Shown: positions 2,273 through 43,369, counted from the first letter of the stretch. The stretch is 64,000 bases of DNA from Pristiophorus japonicus (GCF_044704955.1 NC_091997.1:85808001-85872000); one strand, 5' to 3'. Made by a program: numbers and translations. The notes: generated by a model from the letters alone, not told the origin.

Positions 2273-2307
2273 TGATGACGGCAAAACTGAAATCCAGGCA
2301 GTAAAAT
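2273..2307 (+). CDS. Gene A (IgSF receptor paralog) cytoplasmic mini-exon, DDGKTEIQAVK
   Basis: Polypyrimidine tract + cccAG acceptor, GTAAGT donor at 2308; 35 nt, phase 2 to phase 1, in frame with next exon; paralogous to 41326-41360. Confidence 0.8.
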
Positions 2308-2396
2308 GTAAGTCGTGGCAATCTTTCAGTATCTTTCATTATCTGTCCCCACATGGAAGTGAAACCCATCAAACGCGATCTCCTCTTAATTTCTAG

Positions 2397-2662
2397 GCAG
2401 TGACCGCACGGACCATATACCGCAGGTTGAAACCTCTTTAGCCATTGAACTCAAACCAGACGGCCAATCGCAGCCCAAAGAGGACAGTAAGGAGGATCCC
2501 GTTGCTCTGTCTAATGAGCAGACTTATTCTTTGATAGGTTGCCCGGGGACAGGGAGCCCAGGAGACACGGAGACAAGGTCTCGGCTGGAGGAAGATGATC
2601 CACAACCTGGCCCGTTAGAGATGGAAGAAAATCCTATTTATGCTAAAATAGAGGAAGCCTGA
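2397..2662 (+). CDS. Gene A terminal coding exon: acidic cytoplasmic tail with QTYSLI and NPIYAKI tyrosine motifs
   Basis: ttctAG acceptor after an 89-nt intron; open frame (C)SDRTDHIPQVETSLAIELKPDG...NEQTYSLIGCPG...EMEENPIYAKIEEA*; not in ORF track. Confidence 0.8.
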
Positions 2663-2994
2663 ATGTGATTGAGTAATGGGAGAAAGGCAACGGATAACTT
2701 GGTTAAACTCATTGTGGTACTAGATTTTAAAATATATATTTTACACTGGGTATTGAACACTTTCCCACTGCAGACCCCCAGGGTGGGGGAGAATTCGACA
2801 TTGTTGCACTGGATTTCTGGATGGATCATGGGTGCAAAAGAGGTCCAATTTAGGAGGCCAACCCACCATGCCCGAGTAGTGTCGGAAACATGTTTGATGC
2901 CATATTGGTTTGGGCCTGTAGAGGAGTCCCTGATGTAGGCGTTAGGCTCCTTTGAATATGCTAATAAGGGGCCTACCACTTATTCCAGGATCCA

Positions 2995-3161
2995 AACCGG
3001 CCATTATCACATTGCTGTTTGTGGGACCTTGCTGTGTGCAAATTAGCTGCCACTTTTCCTAAATTACAACAGTGACTAAACTTCAAAAAATACTTAATTC
3101 GCTGTAAAGTGCTTTGTGATCTCCAGAGGTCATGAAAGGCACTCGATAAATGCAAGTCTTT
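2995..3161 (+). mobile_element. Deu-domain SINE 3' portion (SacSINE1/AmnSINE-like) in gene A 3' UTR
   Basis: ATCACATTGCTGTTTGTGGGACCTTGCTGTGTGCAAATT...ATAAATGCAAGTCTTTC; similar to 5345-5520. Confidence 0.75.
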
Positions 3162-3685
3162 CAATTCATTCATTAATTTTGAGGGAAGGGAAACCACGCA
3201 GAATACAGGTGGACAACCGACGCTCGTTGAACACAAGTGCGTTTTCACAGATTGTAACATTGAAGCTGCTTGAAGCGCAGGATTGTGTGTGGAGAAATCT
3301 TCTCCCAATGTTTCACAAATGATATAAAGCCGCTGGTGGCAGCTCCTTGCCTTTCCCGGTTTGTTCTGAGTTTTTGTGGCGACCGACACAGAACATGGAG
3401 ACAGACTCAATGTGAGTTTCCACTCTCACCGACACCGGACGAGGGCGATGGGAACCCACGGTTGAAGAATATAACTGTAACACATTCGACGTGAAATTGG
3501 TCCTCGCCAGTTTCGACTTTGATGGAAATGAAATTCGGGCTCGGTGTGAAACGTGCGCTCGATTCGCGATGAGCTTCACACTGCTGGCGAAGAGTAACTT
3601 CATCCCCTTGGACTCTGCTTAGATAGAACAACGCATCGCTGGTGTGTAATACGCAAAATGGAACTTGTGTGATTGGAAGTCAATC

Positions 3686-3691
3686 AATAAA
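3686..3691 (+). terminator. Candidate polyadenylation signal of gene A
   Basis: AATAAA ~1 kb after the stop; conserved at 43184-43189 in the paralog. Confidence 0.55.
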
Positions 3692-5179
3692 CACTGTTTA
3701 AAAATTATAACTAAATGACGAGCTGTGTCATCTGTCCAGCAGGAATTTTATGGCAAACTAATTGAATGAATGAACTGATCTCAGTGAGGACACTGCATTT
3801 AGACTCAAGGGGAAGTGGGAGGAGGTAGGGGGTGTGGGGAGAGTGGGAGTAAGGAGGGTTTGAGGGGATTGGGAGGGAGGTGTGAGTGGGCAGTGGGGAG
3901 TGGGAGGGAAGGGGGAGTGGGAGGGAGAGTGGGGAGTGAAGAGGGTGTGAGGGAAGGGGCAGTGGAGAATGATAGGCTAGGGGGAATGGGAGGGTGGAGT
4001 GGGGGGAGTGGGAGTGAGGAGGGTGTGGGGGGAGTGGGTGGGAGGGGGAGTGGAAGCAAATTTATGAGGACGCTGAGGGAAGTTCATGATTGTGTAAGAG
4101 AAAGTTTGGTATAAATTGTCAGCCCCCAGCAGATCGCTAAAGAGTATTTTTAAAAGCATAAAACATTTCAATGTTGAAATGTTGAACAATACATGTCTAT
4201 CAGTAAGATAAAAGGACTTTCACGCGAGAGTCACCAATCCCACACTCCTTGAGGGCAGCCATGCTCAAACGGGTCAGGGGTTAGCTCTGTGACCCTCTGC
4301 TCCATTGTGTCTCCTTGAAGCAGAGCTCACTCTGACGGCAGGTTGGGGGGGAGGGGGTGGGAGGGGACAGAGTCAGTGAATTAACCCTCATAACCCTGGC
4401 ATTTGCCTCATTGTCCAGCCCTTGGCTTCAGCACGATCTCTGAAACAATGGGTGCCATTTGCAATATGAGCACCACACGCAAGGACTGGTGTGTAGCAAA
4501 TCCAAACGAACTCAGTACGGAAATGGAAGGAAGCGTGTGATGATTGGAAATTTTAATTGATGGGAGCAAGTCTAAAAGGCTCAGCTATTTACAGCTTGTT
4601 AGTAGAAGCGGGTGTGAGCAGAAATGCCAACCGCACTGTCGCATAAATCAAACGATGAACTCTTAAAAATCATGAGGTTTGCTATACAAATCATGAGTTG
4701 CTATTTTTTTCCCTGACCCCTTGCTTACCTTTGATCCTGGACAGGAAGCGCAGTCCGCGACCTTTGCTCCCAGACAGGAAGCGCATTCGGCCGTCACTAA
4801 CCGATTACTGACATAAGAAATAGGAGCAGGAGTGGGTGGATTGATGGCCCCGCTGTCGGGTCACTCACGGGCCAGTCTCGCTCTCCTTATCACCGTTACT
4901 CCTCCCGCAGCAAAATTTTTACTTCAGGCACCAGGAGGTGATTTCTGTTCCCACTGCAAATCCGAATAGTTGGCTGAAGAAGATTAAAAACAATCTCCCA
5001 CCCATTGGATACCTGAAGTCCACCCAACTCAAATTCACGAGCGAGCATCAAAAGGGCCTCTAGAACTCCCACCGGGATTGGTTGGGAACCATATTTCAAA
5101 TCTGCAGGGCTATGGGAACAAATTGGATAGCTCTTTCAACCCACGGGCACAGGCACGATGGGCTGAATGGACTCTTTCA

Positions 5180-5530: not shown

Positions 5531-5770
5531 TTTCTTTTCTGTCTTCATCCTACTCCGTAGACCATGTACAAGTTGCTCTATCTTAGAAATCCCCTATTTC
5601 AATCTCTCAACCATTGGTGGCCGTGCCTTCAACTGCCAAGGCACTAAGCTCTGGAATTCTCTCCTGTGGCCGGGATTACACCACAGGAAAACTTTCTGTC
5701 TATTATTGCTCGCTGACCCCCAAAGTAACCAAGGAACACACTTTGTTCCTGACCAATTACATTCTGTTTC

Positions 5771-6317: not shown

Positions 6318-7558
6318 GGCCGTGGGACCGAGAGCAGTGGCCGTGGGGCCGAGAGTGGTGGCAGTGGGGGCCGAGAGTGGTGGCAGTGGGGACCGAGAGT
6401 GGTGGCCGTGGGACCGAGAGTGGTGGCCGTGGGACCGAGAGTGGTGGCCGTGGGACCGAGAGCGGTGGCCGTGGGACCGAGAGTGGTGGCCGTGGGACCG
6501 AGAGTGGTGGCCGTGGGACCGAGAGTGGTGGCCGTGGGACCGAGAGTGGTGGCCGTGGGACCGAGAGCGGTGGCCGTGGGGGCCGAGAGTGGTGGCCGTG
6601 GGACCGAGAGTGGTGGCCATGGGGACCGAGAGTGGTGGCCGTGGGACCGAGAGTGGTGGCCGTGGGACCGAGAGTGGTGGCCGTGGGACCGAGAGTGGTG
6701 GCCGTGGGACCGAGAGTGGTGGCCGTGGGACCGAGAGTGGTGGCCGTGGGGACCGAGAGTGGTGGCCGTGGGACCGAGAGTGGTGGCCGTGGGACCGAGA
6801 GTGGTGGCCGTGGGACCGAGAGTGGTGGCCGTGGGACCGAGAGTGGTGGCCGTGGGACCGAGAGTGGTGGCCGTGGGACCGAGAGTGGTGGCCGTGGGAC
6901 CGAGAGTGGTGGCCGTGGGACCGAGAGTGGTGGCCGTGGGACCGAGAGTGGTGGCCGTGGGACCGAGAGTGGTGGCCGTGGGACCGAGAGTGGTGGCCGT
7001 GGGACCGAGAGTGGTGGCCGTGGGACCGAGAGTGGTGGCCGTGGGGGCCGAGAGTGGTGGCCGTGGGGGCCGAGAGTGGTGGCCGTGGGACCGAGAGTGG
7101 TGGCCGTGGGACCGAGAGTGGTGGCCGTGGGACCGAGAGTGGTGGCCGTGGGACCGAGAGTGGTGGCCGTGGGGACCGAGAGTGGTGGCCGTGGGACCGA
7201 GAGTGGTGGCCGTGGGACCGAGAGTGGTGGCCGTGGGACCGAGAGTGGTGGCCGTGGGACCGAGAGTGGTGGCCGTGGGACCGAGAGTGGTGGCCGTGGG
7301 ACCGAGAGTGGTGGCCGTGGGACCGAGAGTGGTGGCCGTGGGACCGAGAGTGGTGGCCGTGGGGACCGAGAGTGGTGGCCGTGGGACCGAGAGTGGTGGC
7401 CGTGGGGGCCGAGAGACCGAGAGTGGTGGCCGTGGGGGCCGAGAGTGGTGGCCGTGGGACCGAGAGTGGTGGCCGTGGGGGCCGAGAGCGGTGGCCGTGG
7501 GACCGAGAGTGGTGGCCGTGGGACCGAGAGTGGTGGCCGTGGGACCGAGAGTGGTGGC
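6318..7558. repeat. GC-rich 21-bp minisatellite (GGGACCGAGAGTGGTGGCCGT)n, roughly 58 units
   Basis: Near-perfect tandem array with occasional 22-bp variants; produces 7-aa-period ORFs in all six frames. Confidence 0.97.
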
Positions 7559-7584: not shown

Positions 7585-8530
7585 GAGAGAGACTGGGGAA
7601 GAGAGAGAGGCTGGGGGGCAAGGAAGACTGGGAGAGAGAGGCTTGTGGGAGAGCACAAGAGAGGCTGGGGGGAGAGAGAGACATGAGCGAGAGAGAGGCT
7701 GGGGGAGAGAGAGAGAGAGAGAGAGGCCAGGGGAGCGAGAGAGAGAGAGAGAGGCTGGGGGAGAGAGAGAGAGAGAGAGGCTAGGGGAGCGAGAGAGAGA
7801 GAGAGAGAGGCTGGGGGAGAGAGAGTCTGCAGAGAGAGAGAGGCTGGAGGGAGAGAGAGAGAGAGAGGCTGCAATGAGAGAGAGGCTGGGGGAGAGAGAG
7901 AGGGGGGCTGGGGGAAGAAAGACGCTGGGGGGGAGAGAGAGATGCTGGGGGAGAGAGAGGCTGGGGGGGAGAGAGAGAGTCTGGGGGAGAGAGATAGAAG
8001 GGCTGGAGGAGAGAGAGAGAGGCTGGAGGAGAGAGAGAGCGGCTTGGGAGAGAGAGAGAGGCTGGGGGGGAGAGAGAGAGAGAGAGAGACTGGGGGGGAG
8101 AGAGAGAGCGAGAGAGGCTGGGGGGGAGAGAGAGCGAGAGCGGCTGGGGNNNNNNNNNNNNNNNNNNNNNNNNNNNNNNNNNNNNNNNNNNNNNNNNNNN
8201 NNNNNNNNNNNNNNNNNNNNNNNNNNNNNNNNNNNNNNNNNNNNNNNNNNNNNNNNNNNNNNNNNNNNNNNNNNNNNNNNNNNTGGGGGTAGGAGAGAGA
8301 GAGAGCGAGAGGCTGGAGAGGGGGCGGGGGGAGAGAGATAGAGGCAAGGGGGGAGAGAGAGAGAGAGAGAGGCTGGAGGGAGAGAGAGAGAGAGACTGGG
8401 GGGGGGACAGAGAGGCTGGGGGGGGGGGACAGAGAGAGAGAGGCTGAGGGCAGAGAGAGAGAGGCAGGGGTAGAGAGAGAGCAAGAGAGAGGCTGGGGGC
8501 GGGGAGAGACATGGGTGGGGGGGAGAGACA
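7585..8530. repeat. (GA)n-GGCTGGGG low-complexity array with N gap 8150-8283
   Basis: Direct inspection. Confidence 0.9.
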
Positions 8531-9039: not shown

Positions 9040-12000
9040 ATGTTTGAGTCCAGAAGGCTGTAAAGTGCCAAAACGAAAGATGAGGTGCTGTTCTTCGAGC
9101 TTGCGTTGAGCTTCATTGGAACAGTGTAGGAGGCCGAGGACGGAGAGGTCAGAGTGCAAGTGGAGAGGAGAATTAAAGTGACAGGTGACCGGAAGCTCAG
9201 GGTCACACTTACGGACTGAACGGAGATGTTCTGCAAAGCGGTCACCCAATCTACGCTTGGTCTCCCCAATGTAGAGGAGACCACATCATGAGTAGCGAAC
9301 ACAGTATACTAAATTGCAAGCAGTACAGGTAAATCGCTGTTTCACCTGGAAGGAGTATTTGGGGCCCTGGACTGTGGGAAGGGAGGAGGTAAAAGGGCAG
9401 GTGTTGCATCTCCTGCGCTTGCAGGGGAAGATGTTGTGGGAATGGGCGGGATGCTGGGGGTGATTGAGGAGTGGACCAGTATGTCCCGGAGGGAGCAGTC
9501 CCTTCGGAATGCTGAGAGGGGAGGGGAGGGGAAGATGTGATTGGTGGTGGGATCACGCTGGAGGTGGTGGAGGATGATCCATTAAACATGGAGGCTCGTG
9601 GGGTGAAAGGTGAGGACAAGGGGAAACCTGTCATGGTTCTGAGAGGGAGGGGAAGGGGTGAGGGCAGAAGAGCGAGAAATAGAACGGACACGGTTGAGAG
9701 CCATGGTAACCACAGTGGAGGGGAATCTTCTGTTGAGGAAAAAGGAAGACATGTCAGAGGCACTAGTGTCAAAGGTGGCGTCTTCAGAACAGATGTGACG
9801 GAAAGTAATACGACCTTACTATACAGTTTAAATGCACACGAGGCCCATGCTTGAGAGAAGGTCACTCTGTGACCAGTAACCTTTATTCACGAGCACTCAA
9901 GTGATGAAGGTGGGTGGAGCTTCCCCTTTTATACCTGAAAGTCCAAGTGAGGAGTGTCTCTCACAAGTTCACCACCTAGTGGTCATTGCTCTCACAGTGT
10001 ACAACTAAGGTCAGTTTATACATGGGTTACAATGATGGTTGAATACATAACATCACCTCCCCCCCGAAAGTCTTATTGGGATCACAGGTTGAGTCTCTCT
10101 GGTGGTTTACGCTCCCTTGTAGAGCCCCTGAGTTGGGGCTCCGGTTGTTGGGCGCTGGCCTGAGTGTCTGCTGTTTGCAGTGCCTCAGGCCTGTCCGGAC
10201 TGCCCACAGTGACTGGGCTCTCCTCCACTTGGTTCCGGTGTTCGGTCACCTGTGGTGGAGTGAACTCGACATCGTGTTCTTCCTCTGCTTCTTCGATGGG
10301 GTTGCTGAACCTCCTTTTTGTTTGATCTACATGTTTGCGGCAGATTTATCCATTGGTAAGTTTAACTATCAGAATCCTATTCCCCTCTTTGGCAATCACA
10401 GTGCCTGTGAGCCATTTGGGCCCTGCAGCGTAGTTGAGGACAAAGACAGGGTCATTGACATCGATACCTCGCACCCTCGCATTCCTGTCATGGTAGTCAC
10501 ATTGTGACTGACGCCTGCTCTCGACAATTTCTTTCATGGTGGGATGTATAAGAGATAACCTGGTTTTGAGCGTCCTTTTCATTAGCAGCTCTGCGGGTGG
10601 AACCCCTGTGAGCGAGTGTGGTCGGGATCTGTAGGCAAACAGGAGGCGTGATAAGCGGCTTTGTAGGGAACCCCCTTGGATTCTGAGCATTCCCTGTTTG
10701 ATTATCTGCACTGCTCATTACGCCTGCCCATTAGAGGCCGGCTTGAACGGTGCCGTTCTGACATGGTTAATTCCATTGCCTGCCATGAAGTCCTGGAATT
10801 CAGTGCTTGTGAAGCACGGGCCATGGTCACTGACCAAGACATCCGGTAGACCATGGGCGGCGAACATTGGCCGTAGACTTTCTACCGTGGCAGAGGATGT
10901 GCTTGAATTTAAAATGTCACACTCGATCCATTTGGAGTAGGCGCCTACTACAACCAAAAACATTTTTCCGATGAAAGGAACTGCATAGTCCACATGGATG
11001 TGTGACCATGGCTTGGTGGCCCAGGACCAGGGGCTAAGGACGGCTTCCCAGGCCCCTTTCCCAGCTGGGCACACATATTGTACCTGCGAACACAAAGTTC
11101 CAGGTCTGCATCTATCCCTGGCCACCAAACGTGTGACCTGGCAATTGCCTTCATCATGACAATGCCCGGGTGCTCGTTGTGGAGTTCTCTGATGAACACC
11201 TCTCTGCCCATCTGGGGCATGACTACACGGCTTCACCATAGTAGGCAATCGGCCTGAATCGAGAGTTCATCCCTGCGCCTGTGAAATGGTTTAAATTCCT
11301 CAGGGCATGCCCCGTACGTGGCTGCCCAGTCCCCATTCAGGACACATTTCTTGACTAAAGACAGTAGCGGGTCTCTATTTGTCCAGACCTTAATCTGACG
11401 GGCTGTCACAGGTGAGCCTTCGCTTTCGAAAGCTTCAACAGCCATGATCATCTCAGCAGCCTGCTCGGTAGCCCCCTCAGTGGTGGCTAGTGGGAGCCCG
11501 CTGAGTGCATCGGTGCAGTTTTCAGTGCCCGGTCTGTGCCGAATTGTATAGTCATAGGCGGCTAACGTGAGTGCCCACCTCTGTATGCGGGCCGATGCGT
11601 TTGCATTTATGGCCTTGTTGTCGGCCAAAAGGGACCTTAGGGGTTTGTGATCTGTCTCCAGCTCAAATTCCCTGCCAAACAAGTACTGGTGCATTTTCTT
11701 TACTGTGTATACACATGCAAGCGTCTCCTTTTCTACCATCCCGTAGCCCCTTTCTGCCTGGGACAGACTTCTGGAGGCATTAGCTACTGGCTGTAACTGA
11801 CCCTTGGCATTAACATGCTGCAACACACACCCGACCCCATAGGACGATGCATCGCATGTTAAAACAAGTTTCTTACATGAGTCATATAGCGTTAACAGAT
11901 TGTTGGAGCATAATAAATTGCATGCTCTATCAAAAGCCCTTTCCTGGCGGTCCCCCCAGACCCATTCGCGACCTTTGCGTACGAGCACGTGTATTGGCTC

Positions 12001-14870
12001 TAACAGCGTGCTCAATTTGGGAAGAAAGTTACCAAAATAGTTCAGGAGCCCCAGGAACGAACGCAGCTCCGTCTTGTTACGGGATCTGGGTGCTCTCTGG
12101 ATCGCTTCCGTCTTGGACGCAGTAGGTCTGATCCCATCTGCTGCTACCCTCATCCCCAGGAATTCTACCTCTGGAGCTAGGAAGACGCACTTCGCCTTTT
12201 TCAGTCGCAGCCCTACCCGGTCCAGTCAGCGTAGCACCTCCTCCAGGTTGTGGAGGTGTTCTTCAGTATCGTAATCCGTGATGAGGATGTCGTCTTGAAA
12301 AACCACGGTCCCTGGAATCGACTTGAGGAGCCTTTCCATATTTCGTTGAAAGATCGCGGCGGCCGAACAAATCCCGAACGGACATCTGTTATACTCAAAC
12401 AACCCCTTGTGTGTCGTGATGGTGGTCAGCTTCTTCGACTCACTCGCCAGCTCCTGGGTCATGTAAGCTGAGGTCAGGTCCAATTTTGAAAAAAGTTTGC
12501 CACCAGATAGCGTCGCAAAGAGGTCTTCCGCTCTCAGTAGCGGCTACTGGTCTTGGAGTGACACCCGATTGATGGTGGCCTTGTAATCACCACATATCCT
12601 GACCGACCCATCCGCCTTGAGCACCAGCACAATTGGGCTCGCCCAGTCACTGAATTCGACTGGCGAGATGATGCCTTCCCTCAGCATCCGGTCCAATTCG
12701 CCTTCTATCTTTTCCAGCATCAAGTACGGCACCGCTCTGGCCTTGTGGTGTACTGGCCTGGCGTCCGGGTTTATGTGAATCACTACCTTGGTCCCCATGA
12801 AAGTGCCAATGCCGGGTTGAAATAATGAGTCAAATTTGTCCAGGACCTGTGAGAATGATACTCACTCCACAGAAGAAATTGCATTGACATCGCCCCATTT
12901 CCAGTTCATGACAGCAAGCTAACTCCTCCAAAGTAGTGCGGGACCGTCCATCGGGACAATCCAGAGTGGCAACCTGTTCTCCAAATCTTTGTGGGTCACA
13001 ACTACCGTGGCACTGCCTAGCACCGGAATGATCTCCTTTGTGTATGTCCGTAGCTGTGCGTCAATCGGCGATAATTTTGGCCTCCTAGCCTTGGACGCCC
13101 ACAACTTTTTGAACTGTTTGATACTCATCAGGGACTAGCTGGCCCCCGTGTCTAGCTCCATTGATACTGCGATGCCATTGAGGAGCACTTTCATCATTAT
13201 CGGTGGCATCCTGGTGTATGAACTGTATTTGTGCTCCACATGAACTCGCTGAACTTCAGCTTCCAGCGATTTCCCCCAGTGTTCATTTGGCCTCGTAGGG
13301 CTTACATCGGGCCCATCCTTCTCGTACATCACCCTGGCTGCAGGCTTCCTGCACATACGGGCCAAGTGACCGCTGACGTTGCAATTTCTGCAGGTATATT
13401 GCTGATACCTGCAAACTCAGGCTGGGTGTGTGCCTCCACACCTCCAACATGAGCCGTTGTTGGAAACAAAAGGTCCATTACCAGTCCATCGTCTCTGACT
13501 GTGTCTGTAACTGTCCTTAAGCACACCATTAACAGATGTTGATGGCCCCATTACTGGCCTCATTGTCCCTTGTGATGGCGTGAATCGCCGTTCAGCTAGC
13601 CATTGTCTCTGATAAATTCTGATAAACAGGGTTCGACTACATGTTGGGGCATGTCTGATTGCCCTTGTCTGCCTGGAGAACTGTGTGCTGCGTTAACAAT
13701 GTTAACTCCCTGTCCATTTGCTGCATTTGAGCCCAGATTTTTGTCAAACATCATTCTGGTCTCTTCCTCCCCTGAGATAAAAGTCTGGGCCATCAAGGCC
13801 GCCGTTTCCAGGGTCAAGTCTTTGGTTTCAATCAGTTTCCTGAAAACCCCAGCGTGCCCGATGCACTCAATAAAAAAGTCTCGCAGCATCTCCACTCTGC
13901 ATGTATCAGGGAACTTACATCGGCTCGCCAGTCGCCGGAGATCTGCCACAAAGTCTGGAACGTTTTGCCCTTCTCGCCGCCGGTGCATGTAAAACCGGTG
14001 TCTCGCCATGTGTATGCTGCTCGCCAGTTGAAGGTGTTCCCCGATTAACTTACTGAGCTCTTCAAACGTTTTGTCCGCCGGCTTCTCTGGCGCTAGAAGA
14101 TCCTTCATCAGGCAATACGTCCTGGATCCACAAACCGTCAGGAGTTGAGCCCTGCGTTTGTCGGCCGACTCCTGTCCCAACCATTCCTTAGTGACGAAAC
14201 TTTGCTGTAGTCTCTCAATAAAATCATCACCAACACATTACCTCTCGTCTGTGCTGCTAGTGGCCATGCTCACGTGGTTTAAATCCCAGTTTCCCGTCGC
14301 CAATGATACGTCCTTACTATACAGTATAAATGCAGACGAGGCCCATGCTTGAGAGAAGGTCACTCTGTGACCAGTAACCTTTATTCACTAGCACTCAAGT
14401 GATGAAGGTGGGTGGAGCATCCCCTTTTATACCTGAAAGTCCAGGTTAGGAGTGTCTCTCACAAGTTCACCACCTAGTGGTCATTGTTCTCACAGTGTAC
14501 AACTTAGGTCAGTTTATACATGGATTACAATGATGGTTGAATATATGACAGAAACGAAGAAACTGGGAGAATGGAATGGAGCCTTTACAGGATGTGGGGT
14601 GGGAGGAGGTGTAGTCCAGGTAGCTGTGGGAGTCAGTGGGCTTATTGTGAATGTTTGTCAATAGCCTATCTCCAGAAATGGAGACAGAGAAGTCAAGGAG
14701 GGTAAGGGAAGAGTCGGAGATGGACCATGTGAAGGTGAAGGATGGGTAAAAATTGGATGCAAAGTAAATGACATTTTCTAGTTCAGGGAGAGAACAAGAA
14801 ACAGCACCGGTACAGTCATCAATGTACCGGAAACAATGGTGAGGGAGGGGACCCGAGTACCCACAAAAAG
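9040..14870 (-). mobile_element. Degenerate Penelope-like element (GIY-YIG end 9040-9800; RT part 14551-14870), split by Gypsy A
   Basis: ORF 8935-9249 GDRFAEHLRSVRKCDPELPVTCHFNS is homologous to the GIY-YIG ORF 37982-38422; sequence rejoins across the Gypsy insertion. Confidence 0.85.
9806..14550 (-). mobile_element. Gypsy A: full-length degenerate Ty3/Gypsy LTR retrotransposon (gag-PR-RT-RH-IN)
   Basis: 247-bp LTRs 9806-10052 and 14304-14550 (~13 differences); PBS TGGCGACG; PPT beside 10052; TSD GAAAG/GAAAC; motifs ELDTGAS, VFQDDILI, CDASSYG, ETDHKPL, ASNGQA; many stops/frameshifts. Confidence 0.95.
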
Positions 14871-18561: not shown

Positions 18562-18616
18562 ATGGCGCTTGGTGCTCTGTTTGTGGGTCTTTTCCTTCTG
18601 TTCCAACATGTTGTAG
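18562..18616 (+). CDS. Gene B exon 1: signal peptide MALGALFVGLFLLFQHVV(G)
   Basis: Good Kozak gaaATGG, hydrophobic 18 codons + 1 nt, GTAAGG donor, phase 1 as typical for IgSF leader exons. Confidence 0.8.
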
Positions 18617-28258: not shown

Positions 28259-31200
28259 AAACATAGAAACATAGAAACATAGAAAATAGGTGCAGGAGTA
28301 GGCCATTTGGCCCTTCGAGCCTGCACCACCATTCGATGAGATCATGGCTGATCATTCCCTCAGTACCCCTTTCCTGCTTTCCATACCCCTTGATCCCTTT
28401 AGCCGTAAGGGCCATATCTAACTCTCTCTTGAATATATCCAACGAACCGGCATCAACAACTCTCTGCGGCAGGGATTTCTACGGGTTAACAACTCTCTGA
28501 GTAAAGAAGTTTCCCCTCATCTCAGTCCTAAATGGCCTACCCCTTATCCTAAGACTGTGTCCCCTGGTTCTGGACTTCCCCAACATCAGGAACAATCTAC
28601 CCGCATCTAACCTGTCCCGTCCCGTCAAATTCTTATATGTTTCTATGAGAGCCCCTCTCATCCTTCTAAACTCCAATGTATAAAGGCCCAGTTGATCCAG
28701 TCTCTCCTCATATGTCAGTCCGGCCATCCCGGGAATCAGTCTGGTGAATCTTCACTGCACTCCCTCAATAGTCCTTCCTCAGATTAGGAGACCAAAAGTG
28801 AACACAATAATCCAGGTAAGGCCTCACCAAGGCCCTGTACAACTGCAGTAAGACCTCCCTGCTCCTATACTCAAATCCCCTAGCTATGAAGGCCAACATA
28901 CCATTTGCCTTCTTTACCGCCTGCTGCACCTGTATGCCAACCTTCAATGACTGATGCAACATGACACCCAGGTCTCGTTGCACCTCCCTTTTTCCTAATC
29001 TGCCACCATTCAGATAATATTCTGTCTGCGCGCTTTTGCCCCCAAAGTGGATAACCTCACATTATACTCCATCTGCCAAATTTTTGCCCACTCACTTAGC
29101 CTGTCTTTGTCCTTTTGCAGATTTTGTGTGTCCTCCTCACACATTGCTTTTCCTCCCATCTTTGTATCGTCGGCAAACTTGGCTACGTTACACTCAGTCC
29201 CTTCTTCCAAGTCGTTAATATAGATTGTAAATAGTTGAGGTCCCAGCAATGATCCCTGCAGCACCCCACTCATTGCCAACCCGAGCATGAACCAGAGAGC
29301 CCTACTCTCTATTTTCTGTTCATTAGCCAATCCTCTATCCATGTTAATATATTACCACCAACCCGGTGAAATTTATCTTGTGCATTAACCTTTTATGTGG
29401 CACCTTGTCAAATGCCTTCTGGATGTCCAAATATACCACATCCACTGGTTCCCCTTTATCCACCCTGTTGGTTACATCCTCAAAGAATTCTAGCAAATTT
29501 GTCAAACATGACTTCCCCTTCACAAATCCATGCTGATTCTGCCTGATCGAATTTTGCTTTTCCAAATGTCCTGCTACTGCTTCTTTAAGAATGGACTCCA
29601 ACATCTTCCCAACCACAGATGTTAGGCTAACTGGTCTAAAATTTCCTGCTTTTTGTCTGATTCCTTTTTTAAATAGGAGCGTTACATTTGCAGTTTTCCA
29701 ATCTGCTGGGACCTCCCCAGAATCTAGGGAATTTTGGTAAATTACAACCAATGCATCCACAATCCTTGCCGCTACTTCTCTTAAAACCCGAGGATGCAAG
29801 TCATCATGTCCAGTGGATTTATCTGCCTTTGGTCCCATTGGGCCCAAGTTTTGAGCCGCGTCTAGAACAGCACAGTCCCGACCTGGACGCCCGTTTTTCG
29901 CGCCACAACATGCGCCTAAAAAAAACTTCCAAATTTTCCGGCTCTCTGCAGGTCGTTTGCAGCTCGGCGCAGCACAGCAGGAGCTGTAGGGGGCGGAGCC
30001 GAGTCCCTGCGCTGAAAACAGTGCCGGGACCTCTGCACATGCGCGCTACAGTGGGCGCGCATGTGCAGTAGCTCCAGGCGCCCGAAACTGTGTGGGAGGG
30101 GCCCGAAGCACGCAGCCCCTAGCCCTGGCCCAATGGCCTCACTGGGGCTGCGTGAATAAGGCCACTCCCACGGCCAGCTCCTGCTTCCTCCCGACCCGAC
30201 TCGACTCCCGCTTCCCGCCCCCGCCTCCGGACCGGACCCGACCCCGACACCGACACCAACACCGACCCGACTCCCGCTTCCCACCCCCCCCACCCCGCCG
30301 CCCCCGGACCGGACTGGACCCGACCCCCCGGACCGGACCGGACCCGACCCCCCGGACTGGACCCGACCCGACTCCCGCTTCCATCCCCCCCGACCCGAAC
30401 TGAACCGACCTCCCTCCCACCACCCCCCCGACCCGACCCACGCTCCCCACGACCCGACCCACGATCGCGACCCGACCCAACGCCACCTACCTGTAAATCT
30501 GATGCTGGTGACGGGCCATGCCCAAAGTCTTGGGCCCGGCCGGGCCCGGCCCCTTCAGCCTCCCTCCCCCTTCTCCTTTCCCCCCCCGCCATCTCCTTCC
30601 CCCCCACCATCTCCTTTCCCCCCCACCATCTCCTTTCACCCCCATCTCCTTCCCCCCACCATCTCCTTTCCCCCCATCTCCTTTCCCCCTATCTCCTTCC
30701 CCCCACCATCTCCTTTCCCCCTCCCCCTTCTCCTCCTCCCCCCCTTCTCCCCCTCCTCCTTCTCCCCCCCTCCCCCTTCCCCCTTCTCCCCCCCTCCCCC
30801 TTCTCCCCCTTCTGCACTCGATGAACTGTTCCTCAAGGCTACCCTGACCAATTTGATTTGTCCAATCAACATGGAGGTTAAAATCACCCATGATTACTGC
30901 TATTCCCTTTTTACAAGCCCCCACAATTTCCTGATTTATGCTCCGACCAACAGAGTTGCTGCTGTTAGGGGCCTATAGACTACGCCCACCAGTGACTTTT
31001 TCCCCTTATTATTCCTTATCTCCACCCAAACTGTTTCAACATCCTGATCATTTGAGCCAATATCGTTTCTCACTATTGCAGTGATTCCATCCTTTATCAA
31101 CACCTCCTTTTCCTTTCTGTCTGTCCCTCCGGATTGTCATTTACCTCTGAATATTTAATTCCCAGTCCTGGTTACCTTGCAACCAGGTCTCTGTAATGGC

Positions 31201-32700: not shown

Positions 32701-32719
32701 CACCCTTTGTACTTCCTCG

Positions 32720-35717: not shown

Positions 35718-36119
35718 GATCCACTTATCTCTTCTTCCGAGGACCAGGAGATGTCACCACTCTGCAATGCAACGTGCCCACCGGTGCTGGGAATAAAGTA
35801 ACCTTGTGCAGCTCCAGTGATCCCAGGTCAGAAATGGGTGAAATAAAATGTCAGCACCCAAAGAACGAGAAGCCATGTGATGAAAATATCGGTCCTCAAG
35901 GGAGAAAAGGACACAGTGAGCCAGAGTGTACAAAATGCAAATTACATGACGACCAAACGGAGTCTCTGACATTCGCTGTGAAGACGATTAACTCGATGGT
36001 GTTTACCTTCATGGCTCAGGATTCCACAGAAGGAGGGGCATTGGAGTGTCCGTCCTGGCTCACACTGTCACAGCCGGGATGTGAAAACCACGACTTGTTC
36101 TTTGTGATAACCCAGGATG
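35718..36119 (+). CDS. Gene B exon 2: atypical cysteine-rich extracellular domain (134 codons, 8 Cys), possibly divergent Ig fold
   Basis: Strong polypyrimidine tract + gcAG, GTAGGT donor, phase 1-1, open frame (G)STYLFFRGPGDVTTLQC...GCENHDLFFVITQD. Confidence 0.75.
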
Positions 36120-38997: not shown

Positions 38998-39477
38998 ATT
39001 CAGCTGATATATCTCCTATTGAAGAAAACTCTTTGTCGCTGACAGTGTCAGAGGGAGAGAATGTGACTTTACCCTGCCAGTTTCAGAATAGAAAACTACT
39101 CGCCTTCACTCTGTTTTGGTTCAGATCTGGAAATGTCAATAAGTGTCTGCACTCTGTTTCCATTGACGCTCAGGGGCCATATTCTAACCCACTCTGTTGT
39201 GTGGATAGAGAGTCGTCACAAAGAATCTCTACCCAAAGCTCATACAATCCTTTGGTTAGCCGCCAGTCTCACAACCTTACTATTCACTCAGCGGGCCTGG
39301 TGGACACTGGGAGGTATCTCTGTGCTGTACACAGTCAGGATTCAGGGAAACATGTCTGGAAGATTGCAGCAAACATCTCCCTTGTGACAGAGCCCAGTGC
39401 AGAAACTTCAGACACTCCCACCTCAACATCTGGAATATCCTCAGTGACCGGAAGCATTACTCCTACAAATATACAAA
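38998..39477 (+). CDS. Gene B exon 3: V-set immunoglobulin domain plus Ser/Thr-rich stalk
   Basis: LTVSEGENVTLPC, LFWFR, HNLTI, DTGRYLC canonical V-set motifs; tatAG acceptor, GTAAGT donor, phase 1-1; N-glycosylation sequons NVT, NLT, NIS. Confidence 0.93.
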
Positions 39478-39639: not shown

Positions 39640-39756
39640 GTCCTTACTCCAGTTGCAGTGACATGCGCATTTGTGTTTTGGTTCTGTACTTGGTTGTGCT
39701 AATTTGCATTGATGGAGCACTTTGCATAATCCGAAGGAAATGGCAATCTGCCAAAG
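39640..39756 (+). CDS. Gene B exon 4: transmembrane segment (S)PYSSCSDMRICVLVLYLVVLICIDGALCIIRRKWQSAK
   Basis: ctgcAG acceptor, GTAAGC donor; 21-residue hydrophobic stretch followed by RRK stop-transfer. Confidence 0.85.
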
Positions 39757-39869
39757 GTAAGCAAGAGCTTTAAAATCATTGATCTACATCCAGAAAATTG
39801 CATTAAAGTACAGAATTATTACATTGATTTTTTAATTCGTAGTTCTAATCTTATCATATTCATTGTGAC

Positions 39870-40985
39870 CGTAGAGACATAGGAACAGGAGGGAGCCATT
39901 CAGCCCCTCAAGCCTGTTCCACTGTTCAATTAGATTATGGCTGATCTGCATTTAGCCACCTTGGTTCCATATGCCTTAATACCCTTCATCATCATAGGCA
40001 GTCCCTCGAATCGAGGATGACTTGCATCCACGTCAAAATGTTCACCGGTGTTTTAATGAAGGACCTAAAATTCCAGGTCTGAACTAAATCTTGAAGGGTG
40101 GAAGATGCCTGTGCTTGGATTTTTTTAACGTGTGGTGACTGTTGCTCATCAGCCACCACACGGGCTCGACAGAGCTAGGTCTTGGCCCAGTAGCCAGGAA
40201 TAACCAAGACGGTTGGAGACCAGCTCTGCTGCACAGACCTAGTGCGCACACATATCGCAGTGTGAGCTGGCCCGTGCTGCCCCTGGGCTCTCAACTCTTC
40301 TGGGCCCCGAACTCACGCCTCTCCTGGGCCCCGATCACATCCCTCTACAATCTCTCGCTGCTCCTTCGCCCCGACCTCGCTGCTCCTTCGCCCCGACCTC
40401 GCCGCTCCTGCTGTTCCTGCCCATGCTCCAATCACCGACCTGGACCTTGATGATGTCCCTTTTCACTGGCATTGCTCTCCTGCTCCAGCACGTGCTGCTC
40501 CCTGGAGTAGTATGCAGCCATGCTGCTCCTTCCGCTTCCGCTCCCCGCCTGCTCCAATGACTCTTAACTGATAAACATCCACCAATCTCCATTCTGAAAT
40601 TTTCAATTAGACCCCCCAGCCTCTACAGATTTTAAGGTTCCATTCCCTTGTTCAGGATTCCCCCACCAGAGGAAATAGTTTCTCTCGACCCACCCTATCA
40701 AATCCTTTAATCATCTTAAACACCCCTTAATCTTCTATGTTCAAGGGAATACAAGTCTAGTCTACATAAGAACATAAGAAATAGGAGCAGGATTGGCCAT
40801 ACGGCCCCTCGAGCCTGCTCCGCCATTTAACACCGTCATGGCTGATCCGATCATGCACTCAGGTCCACTTCCCTGCCCGCTCCCCATAATCCCTTAATCC
40901 CTTTGCAACCCATCCTCATAATTTAATCCTTTTAGCCCCGGTATTATCCTGATAAATCTGTGCTTCACCCCTTCTAAGGCCACAT
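39870..40985 (-). mobile_element. CR1 3' fragments with a nested RTE-type short element (~39986-40555)
   Basis: CATAGGAACAGGAG and CATAAGAA tails; CATCATCATAGGCAGTCCCTCGAA start shared with 44163. Confidence 0.65.
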
Positions 40986-41325
40986 ACTGTAGGGCGCTAA
41001 TGTGTTCTTGACGGAGGAAGTTGAATGTAAATTATTTCCTATGGGTCCCTTCCAGTCCAGAGGGAAAAGGAGGGATGGAGTGAGGGAGAGAGAGGGAGAG
41101 AGTGGGAGAGACAGGCAGACATAGACATAGAGAGAGAGAGAAAAGAGGAGGGAGAACTAAAGGGTGAGAGGGAAAACGGGAGAGTGATGGGAGATGGTGA
41201 GGGTGAAAAGTGAAGAGTAGAGAGAGATGGATTCAAATCCAGGTGTCAAAAATAACAAATCCCATTTACATCTGTTCAATATTGTTTGAATCTAATGTTA
41301 CACGTTTAATTTTATGTATTCTTAG

Positions 41326-41357
41326 TGATGGAGGCAAAAGTGAAATCCAGGGAATAA
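41326..41357 (+). CDS. Gene B exon 5: short cytoplasmic tail (V)MEAKVKSRE*
   Basis: cttAG acceptor paralogous to 2273; entered in phase 1 it gives TAA at 41355-41357; downstream donor mutated GT to GG (41361). Confidence 0.55.
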
Positions 41358-42387
41358 AATGGAAGTAGTTGCAATCTTTCAGTATAATCTTCTCAGAAGC
41401 TCCTGGAACTTTATCTCATGTAACGTATAAGAATTCACCATTTTTGCTGTATAAATTTGCTGTAAGTTGACCAAACTTAAAAAGTGACCAAATTTAATGA
41501 CCCAACATGCTTTGGGAGGCCAAGAGTCTGGTTCCTGTGAGAATTTTATAAAATTTTTGAACCAGCAAGGGATTGCAGATAAGGGATTAACCAACCTTGG
41601 ACAGGAACAAACTGTTGAGCCATCATGAGGAAAACAGGAACATCTGCAGACAATGAATAGCCTTGAGGCCACCGATGTAAAAGATAAGATTTAATTCACT
41701 GACTGACCGTTGATCAGAAGAAATGAAGAAAACAACTACTACTATGATTAATATAATTTGGGACACGCACGCAGTGGGCAGGTTACCAAGTTTTGCGGTA
41801 TACAAAGTACTGCGAAAAGACACTCGCTGCTGCAGTCGACGGCAACCTGGTCAGTTGCTAGTTAAAGTCGTACATCTAGTCATCATCGAACCGACCACTC
41901 GTTGGTATTAGTATGAATGTAGTGCTTGCTTATCATTGCTTGATTTTAAATTACGGTAATAAACCTGTGTATGCTGAAGTATAATCAAGGATCTATTATA
42001 TATTATATGCAATAGTTTTGTGTGAACTTACATGTGATTTTTTGCTGATCTTAAGTAAAAAGAAGTTTTTCACAGATTCATTGGTTTTTGAATTGTTTTG
42101 TTTCACGGGTCCGAACTCTGTAAACCATCGGATGGGCCGAGGGGTTATTTCCACATGTCCTACAAACGAAGACAGATGGCTTTCATTATCCACTTGAAGT
42201 GAAACCCATCAGACGTGATCTCCTCTCCCAATATCTCGGCAGAGACCACACGGACCATGGGTGGCAGGTGTACAACCGACCCCCTCGAACACAAGTGTGT
42301 TTTCACAGATTGTAACATTGAAGCTGCTTGAAGCGCAGGATTGTGTGTGGAGAAATCTTCTCCCAATGTTCCGCAAATGGTATAAAA

Positions 42388-42847
42388 CTGAGGAGATTTA
42401 TGAGGATGTTGCCTGGACTGGAGAATTTTAGCTATGAGGAAAGATTGGATAGGCTGGGTTTGTTTTTTTTGGAACAGAAGAGGCTGAGGGGAGACCTTAT
42501 TAAGGAGCCTAAATAGAGTGGATAGGACGGACCTATTTCCCTTAGCAGAGGCATCAACAACCAGGGGCATAGATTTAAAGTAATTGGAAACAGGTTTAGA
42601 GGGGATTTGAGGGGAATTGTTTTCCCAGAGGGTGGTGGTGGTCTGGAACTCACTGCCTGAAAGCGTGGTAGAGGCAGAAACCCTCAGCACATTTAAAAAG
42701 TACTTGTATGTGCACTTAAAGAGCCATAACCTACAGGGCTACGGACCAAGAGCTGGAAAGTGGGATTAGGCTGCAGAGCTCGGCGGCTGGCACGGATACG
42801 ATGGGCCGAATGGCCTCCTCCGTGCGGTAAATTTTTACGATTCTATG
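42388..42847 (+). mobile_element. CR1 3' fragment present only in copy 2
   Basis: RRFMRMLPGLENFSYEERLDRLGLF; TAAA(A)CTG on both flanks. Confidence 0.88.
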
Positions 42848-43369
42848 TAAACTGCTGTTTGTTCTGAGTTTTTGTGGCGACCGACATAGAACATGGAGAC
42901 AGACTCAATGTGAGTTTCCACTCTCACCGACACCGGACGGGAGCGATGGGAACCCACGGTTGAAGAATGTAGCGGCTACACATTCGGCGTGAAATTGGTC
43001 CTCGCCAGTTTCGACTTTGATGGAAATGAAATTCGGGCTCGGTGTGAAACGTGCGCTCGATTCGCGATGAGCTTCACACTGCTGGCGAAGAGCAACTTCA
43101 CCCCCTTGGACTCTGCTTAGATAGAACAACGCATCGCTGGTGTGTAATACGCAAAATGGAACTTGTGTGATTGGAAGTCATTCAATAAACACTGTTTAAA
43201 AATTATAACTAAATGACGAGCTGTGTCATCTGTCCAGCAGGAATTTTATGCCAAACTAATTGAATGAATGAACTGATCTCAGTGAGGACACTGCATTTAG
43301 ACTCAGTGCCCCTGGGTTAGAGAGGAGAAAAATCAGCCAGGGCTCCCAACACTGATTGGTGCCCAAGGA

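What the first reader, a model, noticed from the sequence alone, without database searches (positions are those of the whole stretch)
2273..43305. Candidate paired immune-receptor system: long Tyr-motif tail (gene A) beside short-tail, charged-TM paralog (gene B)
Seen: two tandem + strand paralogs share the intron, mini-exon and 3' UTR. Gene A keeps a ~100-aa tail with two YxxI motifs; gene B assembles into a 361-aa leader/Cys-rich domain/V-set/stalk/TM/short-tail protein with Arg and Asp in or at the TM. Known: KIR, LILR, SIRP, CD300 and fish NITR clusters pair ITIM-bearing long-tail receptors with short-tail adaptor-coupled ones. Inference: this may be an uncharacterised cartilaginous-fish paired receptor family; I cannot assign it to a named family, and gene A's ectodomain is outside the window.
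Basis: partly seen in the sequence, partly recalled or inferred. Interest (0 to 1): 0.9.

Follow-up and report, generated by a model that had tools for sequence, protein, structure and literature searches.

The report
Shark long-tail/short-tail Ig receptor twins
Two neighbouring Japanese sawshark genes encode cell-surface receptors with almost identical outer parts but different membrane anchors and tails, a pairing I found in six of the shark species searched, which looks like an undescribed shark version of the "on/off" receptor pairs of immune cells, although no function has been tested.

Summary
Gene B (18562-41357, + strand, five phase-1 exons with canonical splice sites) translates to 361 aa. 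This is identical to a public "uncharacterized protein" of Pristiophorus japonicus (P0021). The 99-aa tail of gene A in the window is identical to the C-terminus of the 557-aa protein P0013. P0013 has the same leader, outer domain and V-set domain as B (96% and 94% identity), an uncharged membrane anchor and a 189-aa tail with five tyrosines.

The assembly gap (8150-8283) lies in an intergenic GA-rich satellite and touches no exon.

New here: short-tail twins exist in seven shark species. Their anchor exons form one clade (100/99 support). They share a membrane-proximal Cys, an Arg at the outer membrane edge, and a polar residue (Asp, Asn or His) where every long form has Val. Their outer domains instead group by species with the local long-tail gene (92-97.5% identity). 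So the signalling modules are ancient and the ligand-binding parts are homogenised within species, which is the hallmark of paired receptors.

Caveats:
- Gene A has no canonical ITIM. Its invariant motif is NPIY.
- The adaptor partner, cell type and ligand are untested.
- The outer domain's fold is unresolved.
- The family turned up only in sharks.

The scan had already noted this family on neighbouring DNA.

The parts
2273..2307 (+). Gene A 35-nt cytoplasmic mini-exon, read as (G)DDGKTEIQAVK(C) in long-tail genes. The same exon carries a TAA in the other frame, which is the frame short-tail genes use.
   Evidence: Sequence read. 100% match to P0002 residues 307-318. Part of the 99 aa identical to the P0013 C-terminus.
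2397..2662 (+). Gene A last coding exon (88 aa, stop TGA at 2660-2662) with the motifs QTYSLI and ENPIYAKI.
2663..3807 (+). Gene A 3' UTR and downstream flank (AATAAA at 3686-3691). 3206-3328 and 3359-3807 are duplicated in gene B.
   Evidence: blastn. Sequence read.
8150..8283 (.). Assembly gap inside an intergenic GA-rich satellite. No exon or frame is affected.
18562..18616 (+). Gene B leader exon, MALGALFVGLFLLFQHVV + G (phase 1), donor GTAAGG. It is followed by a 17.1-kb first intron rich in transposon fragments.
   Evidence: tblastn with family proteins, sequence read, model check.
35718..36119 (+). Gene B outer-domain (D1) exon, 134 codons, cysteine-rich. It has an Ig-like B-strand Cys and an E-F strand motif, but Phe replaces the usual F-strand Cys, as in gene A.
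   Evidence: A contig of run X1 stops matching exactly at 36119.
38998..39477 (+). Gene B V-set Ig exon plus a Ser/Thr-rich stalk.
   Evidence: Pfam V-set E 1.1e-8. Distant TCR V-alpha matches in the PDB. Covered by an X1 contig at 39054-39435.
39640..39756 (+). Gene B membrane exon: membrane-proximal Cys, Arg at the outer edge, Asp in the hydrophobic core, RRK stop-transfer.
   Evidence: Sequence read. Comparison across seven species. Trees.
41326..41360 (+). Gene B mini-exon read in the other frame: (V)MEAKVKSRE, stop at 41355-41357. The former donor is now GGAAGT.
   Evidence: An X1 contig starts matching at 41324 and runs on past 41450 with no mismatch. The same ending is seen in Heptranchias P0007.
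42190..42315 (+). Remnant of the last exon in gene B. The acceptor AG is lost. The open frame RDHTDHGWQVYNRPPRTQVCFHRL* spans the junction left by a deletion of about 790 bp, corresponding to A 2417-3205, which removed the tyrosine tail.
   Evidence: The same junction and length are seen in Heptranchias P0006/P0008 and, in outline, Heterodontus P0020.
42857..43305 (+). Gene B 3' region, 97% identical to A's 3' UTR (AATAAA at 43184-43189). The 470 bp at 42387-42856, absent from A, look like a retroelement fragment by eye (not tested).

Best explanation
Gene A (its 3' end is in the window; full protein P0013) and gene B (P0021) are tandem members of an unnamed, shark-restricted family of type I membrane receptors. 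The layout is leader, a cysteine-rich outer domain that is probably Ig-like, a V-set domain, a mucin-like stalk and a membrane anchor. The two genes form a paired-receptor twin: they very likely see the same ligand but signal differently.

Shown:
- B is intact, and run X1 has contigs consistent with its splicing.
- B is identical to a public gene model.
- Its ectodomain is 94-96% identical to A's.
- Its anchor and tail belong to an old short-tail lineage present in seven shark species.
- Ectodomains are homogenised within each species.

The short tail arises because these genes lack the first cytoplasmic exon. The 35-nt mini-exon is then read in another frame and stops after 10 codons. The tyrosine-bearing last exon has also been deleted.

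Inferred:
- The long form signals through phosphotyrosine sites. These are five conserved Tyr, including an invariant C-terminal NPIY preceded by an acidic stretch, and a first site that is a canonical ITIM in about half of the species. The signal is most likely inhibitory, of the ITIM and/or CD200R/Dok type.
- The short form has no motifs of its own and signals through a membrane-embedded partner. It would be recruited by the invariant edge Arg and the polar mid-membrane residue. The conserved membrane-proximal Cys may form a disulfide-linked dimer.
For: Identity with public models:
- Gene B model = P0021, and gene A tail = end of P0013.

Domain identities, B versus A:
- leader 100%
- D1 96%
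- V 94%
- membrane exon 56%

Ectodomain and V-domain trees:
- Short and long forms pair by species with 99-100% support.
- A clade of short-form ectodomains is rejected by the AU test (p 1.7e-4; p 4e-43).

Membrane-exon trees:
- All short forms fall on one side of a branch. Support is 99/98 with five species and 100/99 with seven.
- Short-form signature: SCS, Arg, LVLY, and Asp/Asn/His where every long form has Val.
- The same 10-residue ending occurs: VMEAKLKSRE in Heptranchias, VMEANVKFRK in S. torazame, VTEANVKFKN in Mustelus.
- The deletion junction is shared.

Tail and transcripts:
- Tail tyrosines are conserved across 11 long forms.
- Contig pieces of run X1 cover exons, not introns. One ends exactly at the D1 donor and another begins at the mini-exon acceptor.

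Precedents:
- An acidic membrane residue in the activating partner, plus gene conversion of ectodomains, is described for CD300A/CD300C (PMC12447643).
- Inhibition through NPxY and Dok2 without an ITIM is described for CD200R (PMC8007030).
Against: - No tissue or cell-type expression data. Run X1 is of unrecorded type, and only the ends of its contig pieces, not explicit joints, support splicing.
- Gene A has no canonical ITIM, ITSM or ITAM.
- The charged mid-membrane residue is not invariant (Asn in Mustelus, His in two carpet sharks). The Arg sits at the membrane edge rather than in the core, so adaptor coupling is an inference.
- A 2014 survey found no FcR gamma chain in cartilaginous fish (PMC4016189), so the partner is unknown.
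- Gene A's ectodomain and anchor exons lie outside the window. Linking them to the in-window tail rests on the public model P0013 and crosses two assembly gaps.
- The D1 fold could not be modelled (pLDDT 48 and 39.5).
Confidence: 0.6

Rival explanations
1. The short-tail gene B is a non-signalling decoy. It would be a ligand sink or a dominant-negative partner of the long form and would not couple to an adaptor. Its Cys, Arg and polar membrane residue would serve dimerisation or membrane positioning only.
For: - No signalling motif in the 18-residue tail.
- The mid-membrane residue varies between Asp, Asn and His.
- The Arg lies at the membrane edge.
- A conserved membrane-proximal Cys suggests covalent dimers.
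- No adaptor has been identified, and FcR gamma was reported absent from sharks in 2014.
Against: The membrane exon has been kept as a distinct lineage in seven species while sequences on both sides of it are homogenised with the long-tail neighbour. This argues for selection on that segment itself. A polar residue replacing Val in every short form is the classical mark of assembly with a membrane partner.
Confidence: 0.2
2. The family is not immune-regulatory. It would be an adhesion or endocytic/transport receptor family, in which NPxY and YxxΦ (Φ = a bulky hydrophobic residue) act as sorting signals. The short form would be a variant that is not internalised.
For: - NPxY is mostly a trafficking signal (PMC8007030).
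- YSLI and YAKI fit YxxΦ.
- The V domain also matches the polymeric Ig receptor weakly (E about 3e-3).
- No expression data.
Against: - Tandem multigene array with within-species homogenisation of ectodomains.
- Paralogues of one species differ most in the V domain: 83-85% for B versus P0012.
- A long/short split with a polar membrane residue. This combination is typical of leukocyte receptor families and unusual for housekeeping adhesion or cargo receptors.
- The first tyrosine is a canonical ITIM in five of eleven full long tails and in one partial sequence.
Confidence: 0.15
3. Gene B is a decaying partial duplicate of gene A, a pseudogene in the making, and its short tail is simply damage.
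For: Dead donor (GGAAGT), dead acceptor (TCG) and a deletion of about 790 bp relative to A.
Against: - All five coding exons are open with canonical splice sites, and the product equals a public gene model.
- Contigs of run X1 fit the exon boundaries.
- The same architecture, ending and deletion junction occur in other sharks, including both galeomorph and squalomorph species.
- The short-form anchor exon is one well-supported clade.
Confidence: 0.03

Closest known systems
CD300A / CD300C paired receptors (mammals)
   Same: - Long-tail partner beside a short-tail partner with near-identical V-type ectodomains kept alike by gene conversion.
- The short partner has no motifs of its own and carries an acidic residue in the membrane segment (PMC12447643).
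   Different: - CD300 receptors have a single IgV domain, and CD300A has canonical ITIMs.
- No sequence relationship was detected.
- Here there is an extra cysteine-rich outer domain, an Arg at the membrane edge and a membrane-proximal Cys. The acidic residue is not invariant.
CD200R and its short-tail CD200R-like relatives
   Same: - Two extracellular domains.
- Inhibitory tail without an ITIM, built around a C-terminal NPxY preceded by an acidic stretch (EEDE...NPxY in CD200R, EEDD...ENPIY here). It signals through Dok2 (PMC8007030).
- Activating short-tail relatives exist (from my own knowledge).
   Different: - CD200R is V + C2 with the V domain outermost. Here the V-set domain is membrane-proximal.
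- The two tyrosines and the Lys of the extended CD200R motif are not matched.
- There is no sequence hit to CD200R. The only trace is a weak language-model lead for D1 (score 0.91).
Novel immune-type receptors (NITR) of bony fish
   Same: - Fish multigene family of V-domain receptors with TCR-V-like V domains.
- Both long-tail (ITIM) and short-tail, charged-membrane forms. These NITR features are stated from my own knowledge.
   Different: - NITRs have the V domain at the N-terminus, often with a J-like motif, and have been studied in ray-finned fishes (PMC6795676).
- Here the V domain is second, has no FGxG J motif, and the tail has no canonical ITIM in gene A.
- No NITR appeared in any search.
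KIR / LILR / PIR (leukocyte receptor complex)
   Same: - Paired long-tail and short-tail genes in tandem arrays.
- The activating LILR and related forms carry an Arg near the outer end of the membrane segment (PMC4016189 figure legend).
- Ectodomain homogenisation between the paired genes (from my own knowledge).
   Different: - Those receptors use C2-type domains only and were reported to have no shark homologues (PMC4016189).
- The domain types differ here, and no sequence similarity was found.

Membership tests
Paired (long-tail/short-tail) IgSF receptors, as a functional class | Two genes with closely similar ectodomains | tested here: met
   B versus A: D1 96%, V 94%, leader 100%. They are sister rows in the tree with 100/99 support.
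Paired (long-tail/short-tail) IgSF receptors, as a functional class | Genes adjacent in the genome | tested here: met
   A's poly(A) signal is at 3686 and B's leader at 18562, on the same strand. One assembly gap (8150-8283) lies between them, so adjacency rests on the scaffold.
Paired (long-tail/short-tail) IgSF receptors, as a functional class | Long-tail partner carries canonical ITIM(s) | tested here: not met
   Gene A/P0013 has FPYSVV, VAYSVT, HVYCLI, QTYSLI and PIYAKI, and none fits (S/I/V/L)xYxx(I/V/L). The first site is canonical in 5 of 11 full long tails of other species and in the partial Heterodontus sequence P0034.
Paired (long-tail/short-tail) IgSF receptors, as a functional class | Short-tail partner has a charged or polar residue in the membrane segment that the long partner lacks | tested here: met
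   Asp (four species), Asn (one) or His (two) where all 11 long forms have Val. An Arg at the outer edge is present in all seven short forms.
Paired (long-tail/short-tail) IgSF receptors, as a functional class | Short partner associates with an ITAM or YxxM adaptor, and the long partner recruits phosphatases | not testable with these tools
   This needs co-immunoprecipitation or reporter assays.
Paired (long-tail/short-tail) IgSF receptors, as a functional class | Expression on leukocytes | not tested
   Only one public run holds the exons, and its type and tissue are not on record.
NITR | N-terminal V domain (often with a J-like motif) followed by an I- or V-like second domain | tested here: not met
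   The V-set domain is the second, membrane-proximal domain. Its G strand reads VWKIAANISL, with no FGxG. The feature definition is from my own knowledge.
CD200R | V + C2 ectodomain and the tail motif EEDExxPYxxYxxKxNxxY | tested here: not met
   Domain order and type differ. The tail has EEDDPQPGPLEMEENPIY: the acidic stretch, one Pro and NPxY are present, but the two Tyr and the Lys are absent and the spacing is one residue shorter.
CD300 | Single IgV ectodomain; sequence similarity to CD300 V domains | tested here: not met
   Two extracellular domains. The best PDB matches are TCR V-alpha at E about 1e-5, and no CD300 chain is among the 60 best shown.
Immunoglobulin superfamily, V-set | Significant match to the V-set profile, with the conserved Cys...W...DxGxYxC pattern | tested here: met
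   Pfam PF07686 E 1.1e-8, above the gathering score. TLPC...FWF...DTGRYLC is seen.
Immunoglobulin superfamily (outer domain D1) | Ig fold of the N-terminal cysteine-rich domain | tested here: inconclusive
   - No Pfam family for the sawshark D1.
- An I-set match covers D1 residues 84-124 of the whale-shark protein.
- AlphaFold models are beta-rich but have pLDDT 48 and 39.5.
- hhalign of D1 against the family's V domain gives probability 0.1.
- Language-model neighbours are V-set families at 0.91, which is a lead only.

The most novel reading that the evidence does not exclude
Sharks carry a receptor system of their own in which an 'off' module and an 'on' module have been kept apart since before the split of galeomorph and squalomorph sharks, roughly 200-300 million years by my own recollection. 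The 'off' module is a Tyr tail centred on NPIY, probably working through Dok-type or phosphatase adaptors rather than textbook ITIMs. The 'on' module has a membrane-proximal Cys, an edge Arg and a polar core residue, and couples to a still unidentified partner. Meanwhile gene conversion keeps each species' ligand-binding domains identical. The outer domain would be a new, disulfide-rich variant of the Ig fold.
Probability: 0.3. Interest if true: 0.75.

Novelty: new variant of a known kind. Interest (0 to 1): 0.6.

Why it matters
Activating/inhibitory receptor pairs are central to innate immune recognition in mammals, birds and bony fish. For cartilaginous fish, a 2014 survey found no Fc-receptor-like or leukocyte-receptor-complex homologues and no FcR gamma chain (PMC4016189), and I found no paper describing this family.

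A shark-wide family with an old, cleanly separated long-tail/short-tail split would give comparative immunologists three things:
- A concrete, testable candidate for NK- or myeloid-type regulation at the base of jawed vertebrates.
- A natural experiment on how gene conversion and selection partition a receptor gene: ectodomain and 3' UTR homogenised, anchor exon protected.
- A non-ITIM tail (NPIY) and an unusual anchor (edge Arg, polar core, Cys) whose partners are unknown.

It also corrects misleading automatic names such as "serine-rich adhesin for platelets-like" and "putative GPI-anchored protein pfl2" on family members.

Tried and rejected
- Leader exon by signal-peptide scan. A scan of 20-35.7 kb for ATG, a hydrophobic core and a phase-1 donor found nothing convincing. 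The real leader at 18562 was found only by tblastn with family proteins.
- Outer-domain fold. Two AlphaFold runs, one single-sequence and one with an 18-row alignment, gave pLDDT 48 and 39.5. I therefore ran no fold search, because the matches would be meaningless. phmmer of D1 against PDB sequences gave only chance-level integrin hits (E 0.3). hhalign of D1 against the V domain gave nothing.
- Named-family assignment. A family profile against the PDB found only TCR V-alpha at about 1e-4. The tail alone found only shark family members.
- [quoted passage not shown] I rejected this as the main explanation, because the short forms have their own anchor exon and their own gene in seven species. 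Skipping the first cytoplasmic exon of gene A would, however, give a similar ending (VMTAKLKSRQ*, my own reading).
- "B is a recently degraded A." Rejected; see the rival explanations.
- RNA evidence. Only one run holds the stretch, kept as contigs and of unrecorded type. It supports the exon boundaries but shows neither tissue nor expression level.
- Complex prediction was not used. No shark adaptor sequence was in hand, and membrane-helix pairing is outside what that test is validated for.
- Handling of the joined model. The joined gene B model was never sent to a search tool. Searches were made exon by exon by reference. The joined translation was only compared inside a script with P0021, and from then on I used the identical database protein.

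Full report
WHAT IS IN THE SEQUENCE

The window is repeat-rich vertebrate DNA. By the proteins it encodes it is from the Japanese sawshark, Pristiophorus japonicus.

- 2247-2332 matches 41300-41385 at 85%. This is the end of an intron plus a 35-nt mini-exon.
- 2349-2416 matches 42190-42258.
- 3206-3328 matches 42265-42386 at 93%.
- 3359-3807 matches 42857-43305 at 97%. This is the 3' UTR with its AATAAA.
- About 790 bp of copy A (2417-3205), including almost all of its last coding exon, are missing from copy B.

THE ASSEMBLY GAP

The gap at 8150-8283 lies inside a degenerate GA-rich tandem repeat that runs on both sides of it (7632-8149 and 8294-8499). It sits between gene A's poly(A) signal (3686-3691) and gene B's leader exon (18562). 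No exon or reading frame crosses it. It only means that the A-to-B distance and adjacency rest on the scaffold. Two other gaps (1189-1351, 1381-1682) lie in gene A's intron upstream of the mini-exon. I looked up no letters for any gap.

GENE B

The exons, all on the + strand:
- leader 18562-18616
- outer-domain exon 35718-36119
- V-set exon 38998-39477
- membrane exon 39640-39756
- mini-exon 41326-41360, with TAA at 41355-41357

All have AG/GT boundaries and are in phase 1. The leader was not findable by a signal-peptide scan. It was located by tblastn with family proteins.

I searched the exons one by one, by reference:
- The V exon matches Pfam V-set at E 1.1e-8. In the PDB it matches TCR V-alpha domains distantly (E about 1e-5).
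- The outer-domain exon matches no Pfam or PDB family.
- A full HMMER scan of 1.84 billion representative proteins found five clusters with the outer domain, all from sharks.

The joined model was not sent to any search tool. Inside a script its translation (361 aa) proved identical to the database protein P0021, "uncharacterized protein isoform X1" of P. japonicus. I used P0021 from then on.

GENE A

The mini-exon (2273-2307) and last exon (2397-2662) give 99 aa. These are identical to the C-terminus of P0013, a 557-aa P. japonicus protein, and differ from the other sawshark paralogues.

P0013 has the same leader (100%), outer domain (96%) and V domain (94%) as gene B. Its membrane exon is only 56% identical and is uncharged. 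It also has an extra stalk segment and a 189-aa tail.

Gene A therefore does have an Ig ectodomain and an anchor, but those exons lie upstream of the window. The link rests on the public model and crosses two gaps.

HOW THE SHORT TAIL ARISES

In long-tail genes the membrane exon ends in phase 1. It is followed by a first cytoplasmic exon that ends in phase 2, then the 35-nt mini-exon read as DDGKTEIQAVK, then the last exon.

Gene B has no trace of the first cytoplasmic exon between 39757 and 41325. Its mini-exon is therefore entered in phase 1 and reads (V)MEAKVKSRE-stop. The same TAA is present in that frame in gene A.

Downstream in B, three things have changed:
- the old donor is GGAAGT;
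- the old acceptor AG is TCG;
- the tyrosine-bearing part of the last exon is deleted.

TRANSCRIPT EVIDENCE

Only one public run holds part of the 35.5-41.45 kb stretch. It is kept as contigs and its type is not on record. Laid on the stretch, its unique low-depth contigs lie on exons, while repeats have enormous depth.
- One contig stops matching exactly at 36119, the predicted donor, with 63 further letters that do not continue into the intron.
- One covers 39054-39435.
- One begins to match at 41324-41326, the mini-exon acceptor, after 187 letters that do not match the adjacent intron. It then runs without a mismatch past the dead donor to beyond 41450.

This fits a spliced gene B message that reads through the former donor. 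It is not proof, because the explicit joints were not among the rows listed.

THE FAMILY AND THE PAIRING

Word-indexed searches with a long-tail member, with the tail alone and with an 18-sequence profile found 23, 12 and 28 proteins respectively. All come from sharks of 13 species, both galeomorph and squalomorph. No ray, chimaera or bony vertebrate protein passed E 0.001. The source names are "uncharacterized protein" or misleading automatic names.

Short-tail forms exist in Pristiophorus, Heptranchias, Heterodontus, Mustelus, Scyliorhinus torazame, Hemiscyllium and Stegostoma. They share these features:
- a membrane-proximal Cys (SCS or ICS);
- an Arg at the outer end of the hydrophobic segment, in all seven;
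- the motif LVLY;
- a polar residue where every long form has Val (LICIVG): Asp in four species, Asn in Mustelus, His in the two carpet sharks.

Four of them end in the same mini-exon frame: VMEAKVKSRE, VMEAKLKSRE, VMEANVKFRK and VTEANVKFKN.

The remnant frame across gene B's deletion junction is RDHTDHGWQVYNRPPRTQVCFHRL-stop. It has the same length and junction as the ends of two Heptranchias isoforms (RDHTDHGRRMCKRPPQTQMCFHRL). It resembles the Heterodontus isoform end. So the deletion is old, not a recent dismantling.

Trees make the point formally.
- With whole ectodomains (14 sequences), short and long forms pair by species with 100/99 support. The tree that holds the short forms together is 792 log-likelihood units worse (AU p 1.7e-4).
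- With V domains of 17 sequences, all six species that have both forms show the pairing. Identity within species is 92-97.5%, against at most 78% to any other species' short form. The AU test gives p 4e-43.
- With the membrane-exon region the result is opposite. All short forms fall on one side of a branch: 99/98 with five species and 100/99 with seven. Grouping the sawshark copies together is rejected (p 0.009).

In the window the same mosaic is visible in DNA. The 3' UTR of B is 97% identical to A's, while the anchor exon between the two homogenised parts is diverged. My reading is an ancient split of signalling modules with continuing homogenisation of the ligand-binding part, probably by gene conversion. 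This is the pattern described for CD300A/CD300C (PMC12447643).

THE TAILS

Eleven long tails share five tyrosine sites:
- Y1: (L/V/F)(P/A)Y(S/A)(V/L)(V/F/I). This is a canonical ITIM in five of the eleven, and also in the partial Heterodontus sequence. It is not canonical in the sawshark copies (FPYSVV) and is lost in Heptranchias.
- Y2: VAY(A/S)V(T/S).
- Y3: EHVYC(L/V)(I/L).
- Y4: xYS(L/S/W)I.
- Y5: an invariant ENPIY near the C-terminus, preceded by an acidic stretch.

There is no ITAM or ITSM. So "ITIM-bearing" is not correct for gene A.

An NPxY-centred inhibitory tail has a precedent in CD200R, which recruits Dok2. CD200R's extended motif is EEDExxPYxxYxxKxNxxY (PMC8007030). Gene A's EEDDPQPGPLEMEENPIY shares the acidic stretch, a Pro and the NPxY, but not the two Tyr or the Lys. 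The same paper stresses that NPxY is usually a trafficking signal, which keeps a non-immune, endocytic reading alive.

THE OUTER DOMAIN

D1 is a phase-1 exon. It has an invariant early Cys (TLQC) and a typical E-F strand pattern (SLTFxVKxxxSxVFTC). Between them lies a cysteine-rich insert.

In genes A and B the F-strand Cys is Phe. Because both genes share this change, it is further evidence of homogenisation between them.

I regard D1 as probably a divergent Ig-like domain, but this is not shown:
- Pfam finds an I-set match only in the whale-shark protein.
- The AlphaFold models are beta-rich but unreliable.
- Profile comparison with the V domain is negative.
- Language-model neighbours (V-set families, score 0.91) are only a lead.

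VERDICT

The paired-receptor idea is supported structurally and comparatively, and it is extended to an ancient, shark-wide long/short split with concerted evolution of ectodomains.

Three points need correcting:
- The long tail of gene A has no canonical ITIM.
- The short form is old, not recently dismantled.
- The Arg and the Cys, rather than the Asp, are what all seven short forms share.

Immune expression, the membrane partner and the ligand are untested. A 2014 survey reported no FcR gamma chain in cartilaginous fish (PMC4016189).

Both proteins are already predicted in public databases without a name. The scan had already noted this family on DNA just upstream of this window (s1-877523). 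The short-tail twin and the tree evidence are what this report adds.

Noticed in passing
window 6318-7558: A very regular 21-bp minisatellite (GGCCGTGGGACCGAGAGTGGT, about 52 copies, 97% matches). It is followed by a degenerate GA-rich satellite (7632-8499) that contains the assembly gap. The long 'ORFs' here are repeat artefacts.
   Followed up: partly
window 57965-59738 (+): Endogenous gamma-type retrovirus remnant: the C-terminal domain of an MLV-like integrase (Pfam MLVIN_C, E 6e-12), followed by two env-like reading frames. The second matches TLV_coat (E 2e-11).
   Followed up: partly
window 21121-21861 (+): Open 246-aa frame for a Harbinger/PIF-type DDE transposase (Pfam DDE_Tnp_4, E 5e-38), inside gene B's 17-kb first intron.
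   Followed up: partly
window 10346-12153 (-), 47258-50126 (-), 53088-55557 (+): Fragments of LTR-retrotransposon pol genes: RT-RNase H (E 2e-32), aspartyl protease and integrase core. Related copies are 77-93% identical to each other (repeat families D4, D7 and D8).
   Followed up: partly
window 45274-46995 (+), 28496-29847 (-), 51579-53044 (-): LINE reverse-transcriptase fragments (RVT_1, E 1e-13 for 45976-46992). Their 3' tails recur in many places. The 470 bp at 42387-42856, present in gene B's 3' region but absent from gene A, look like one such tail by eye (not tested).
   Followed up: partly
Heptranchias perlo proteins P0001, P0006, P0007, P0008: The public short-tail models of the sevengill shark carry two complete D1-V units in tandem (662-686 aa). 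They are named 'serine-rich adhesin for platelets-like'. This is either a real four-domain receptor or a gene model that fuses the upstream neighbour's ectodomain exons to the short-tail gene.
   Followed up: no
window 2301-2303 and 41355-41357: The 35-nt mini-exon is used in two reading frames. Long-tail genes read it as DDGKTEIQAVK. Short-tail genes read it as (V)MEAKVKSRE-stop. The stop of the second frame is also present in the long-tail gene A, so skipping A's first cytoplasmic exon would produce a B-like short tail.
   Followed up: partly
sawshark proteins P0002, P0019, P0024, P0027, P0015: Public isoform models of the long-tail sawshark genes that lack the V exon, the anchor exon or part of the tail. 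Some would be secreted or V-less forms. Whether these are real splice variants is unknown.
   Followed up: no
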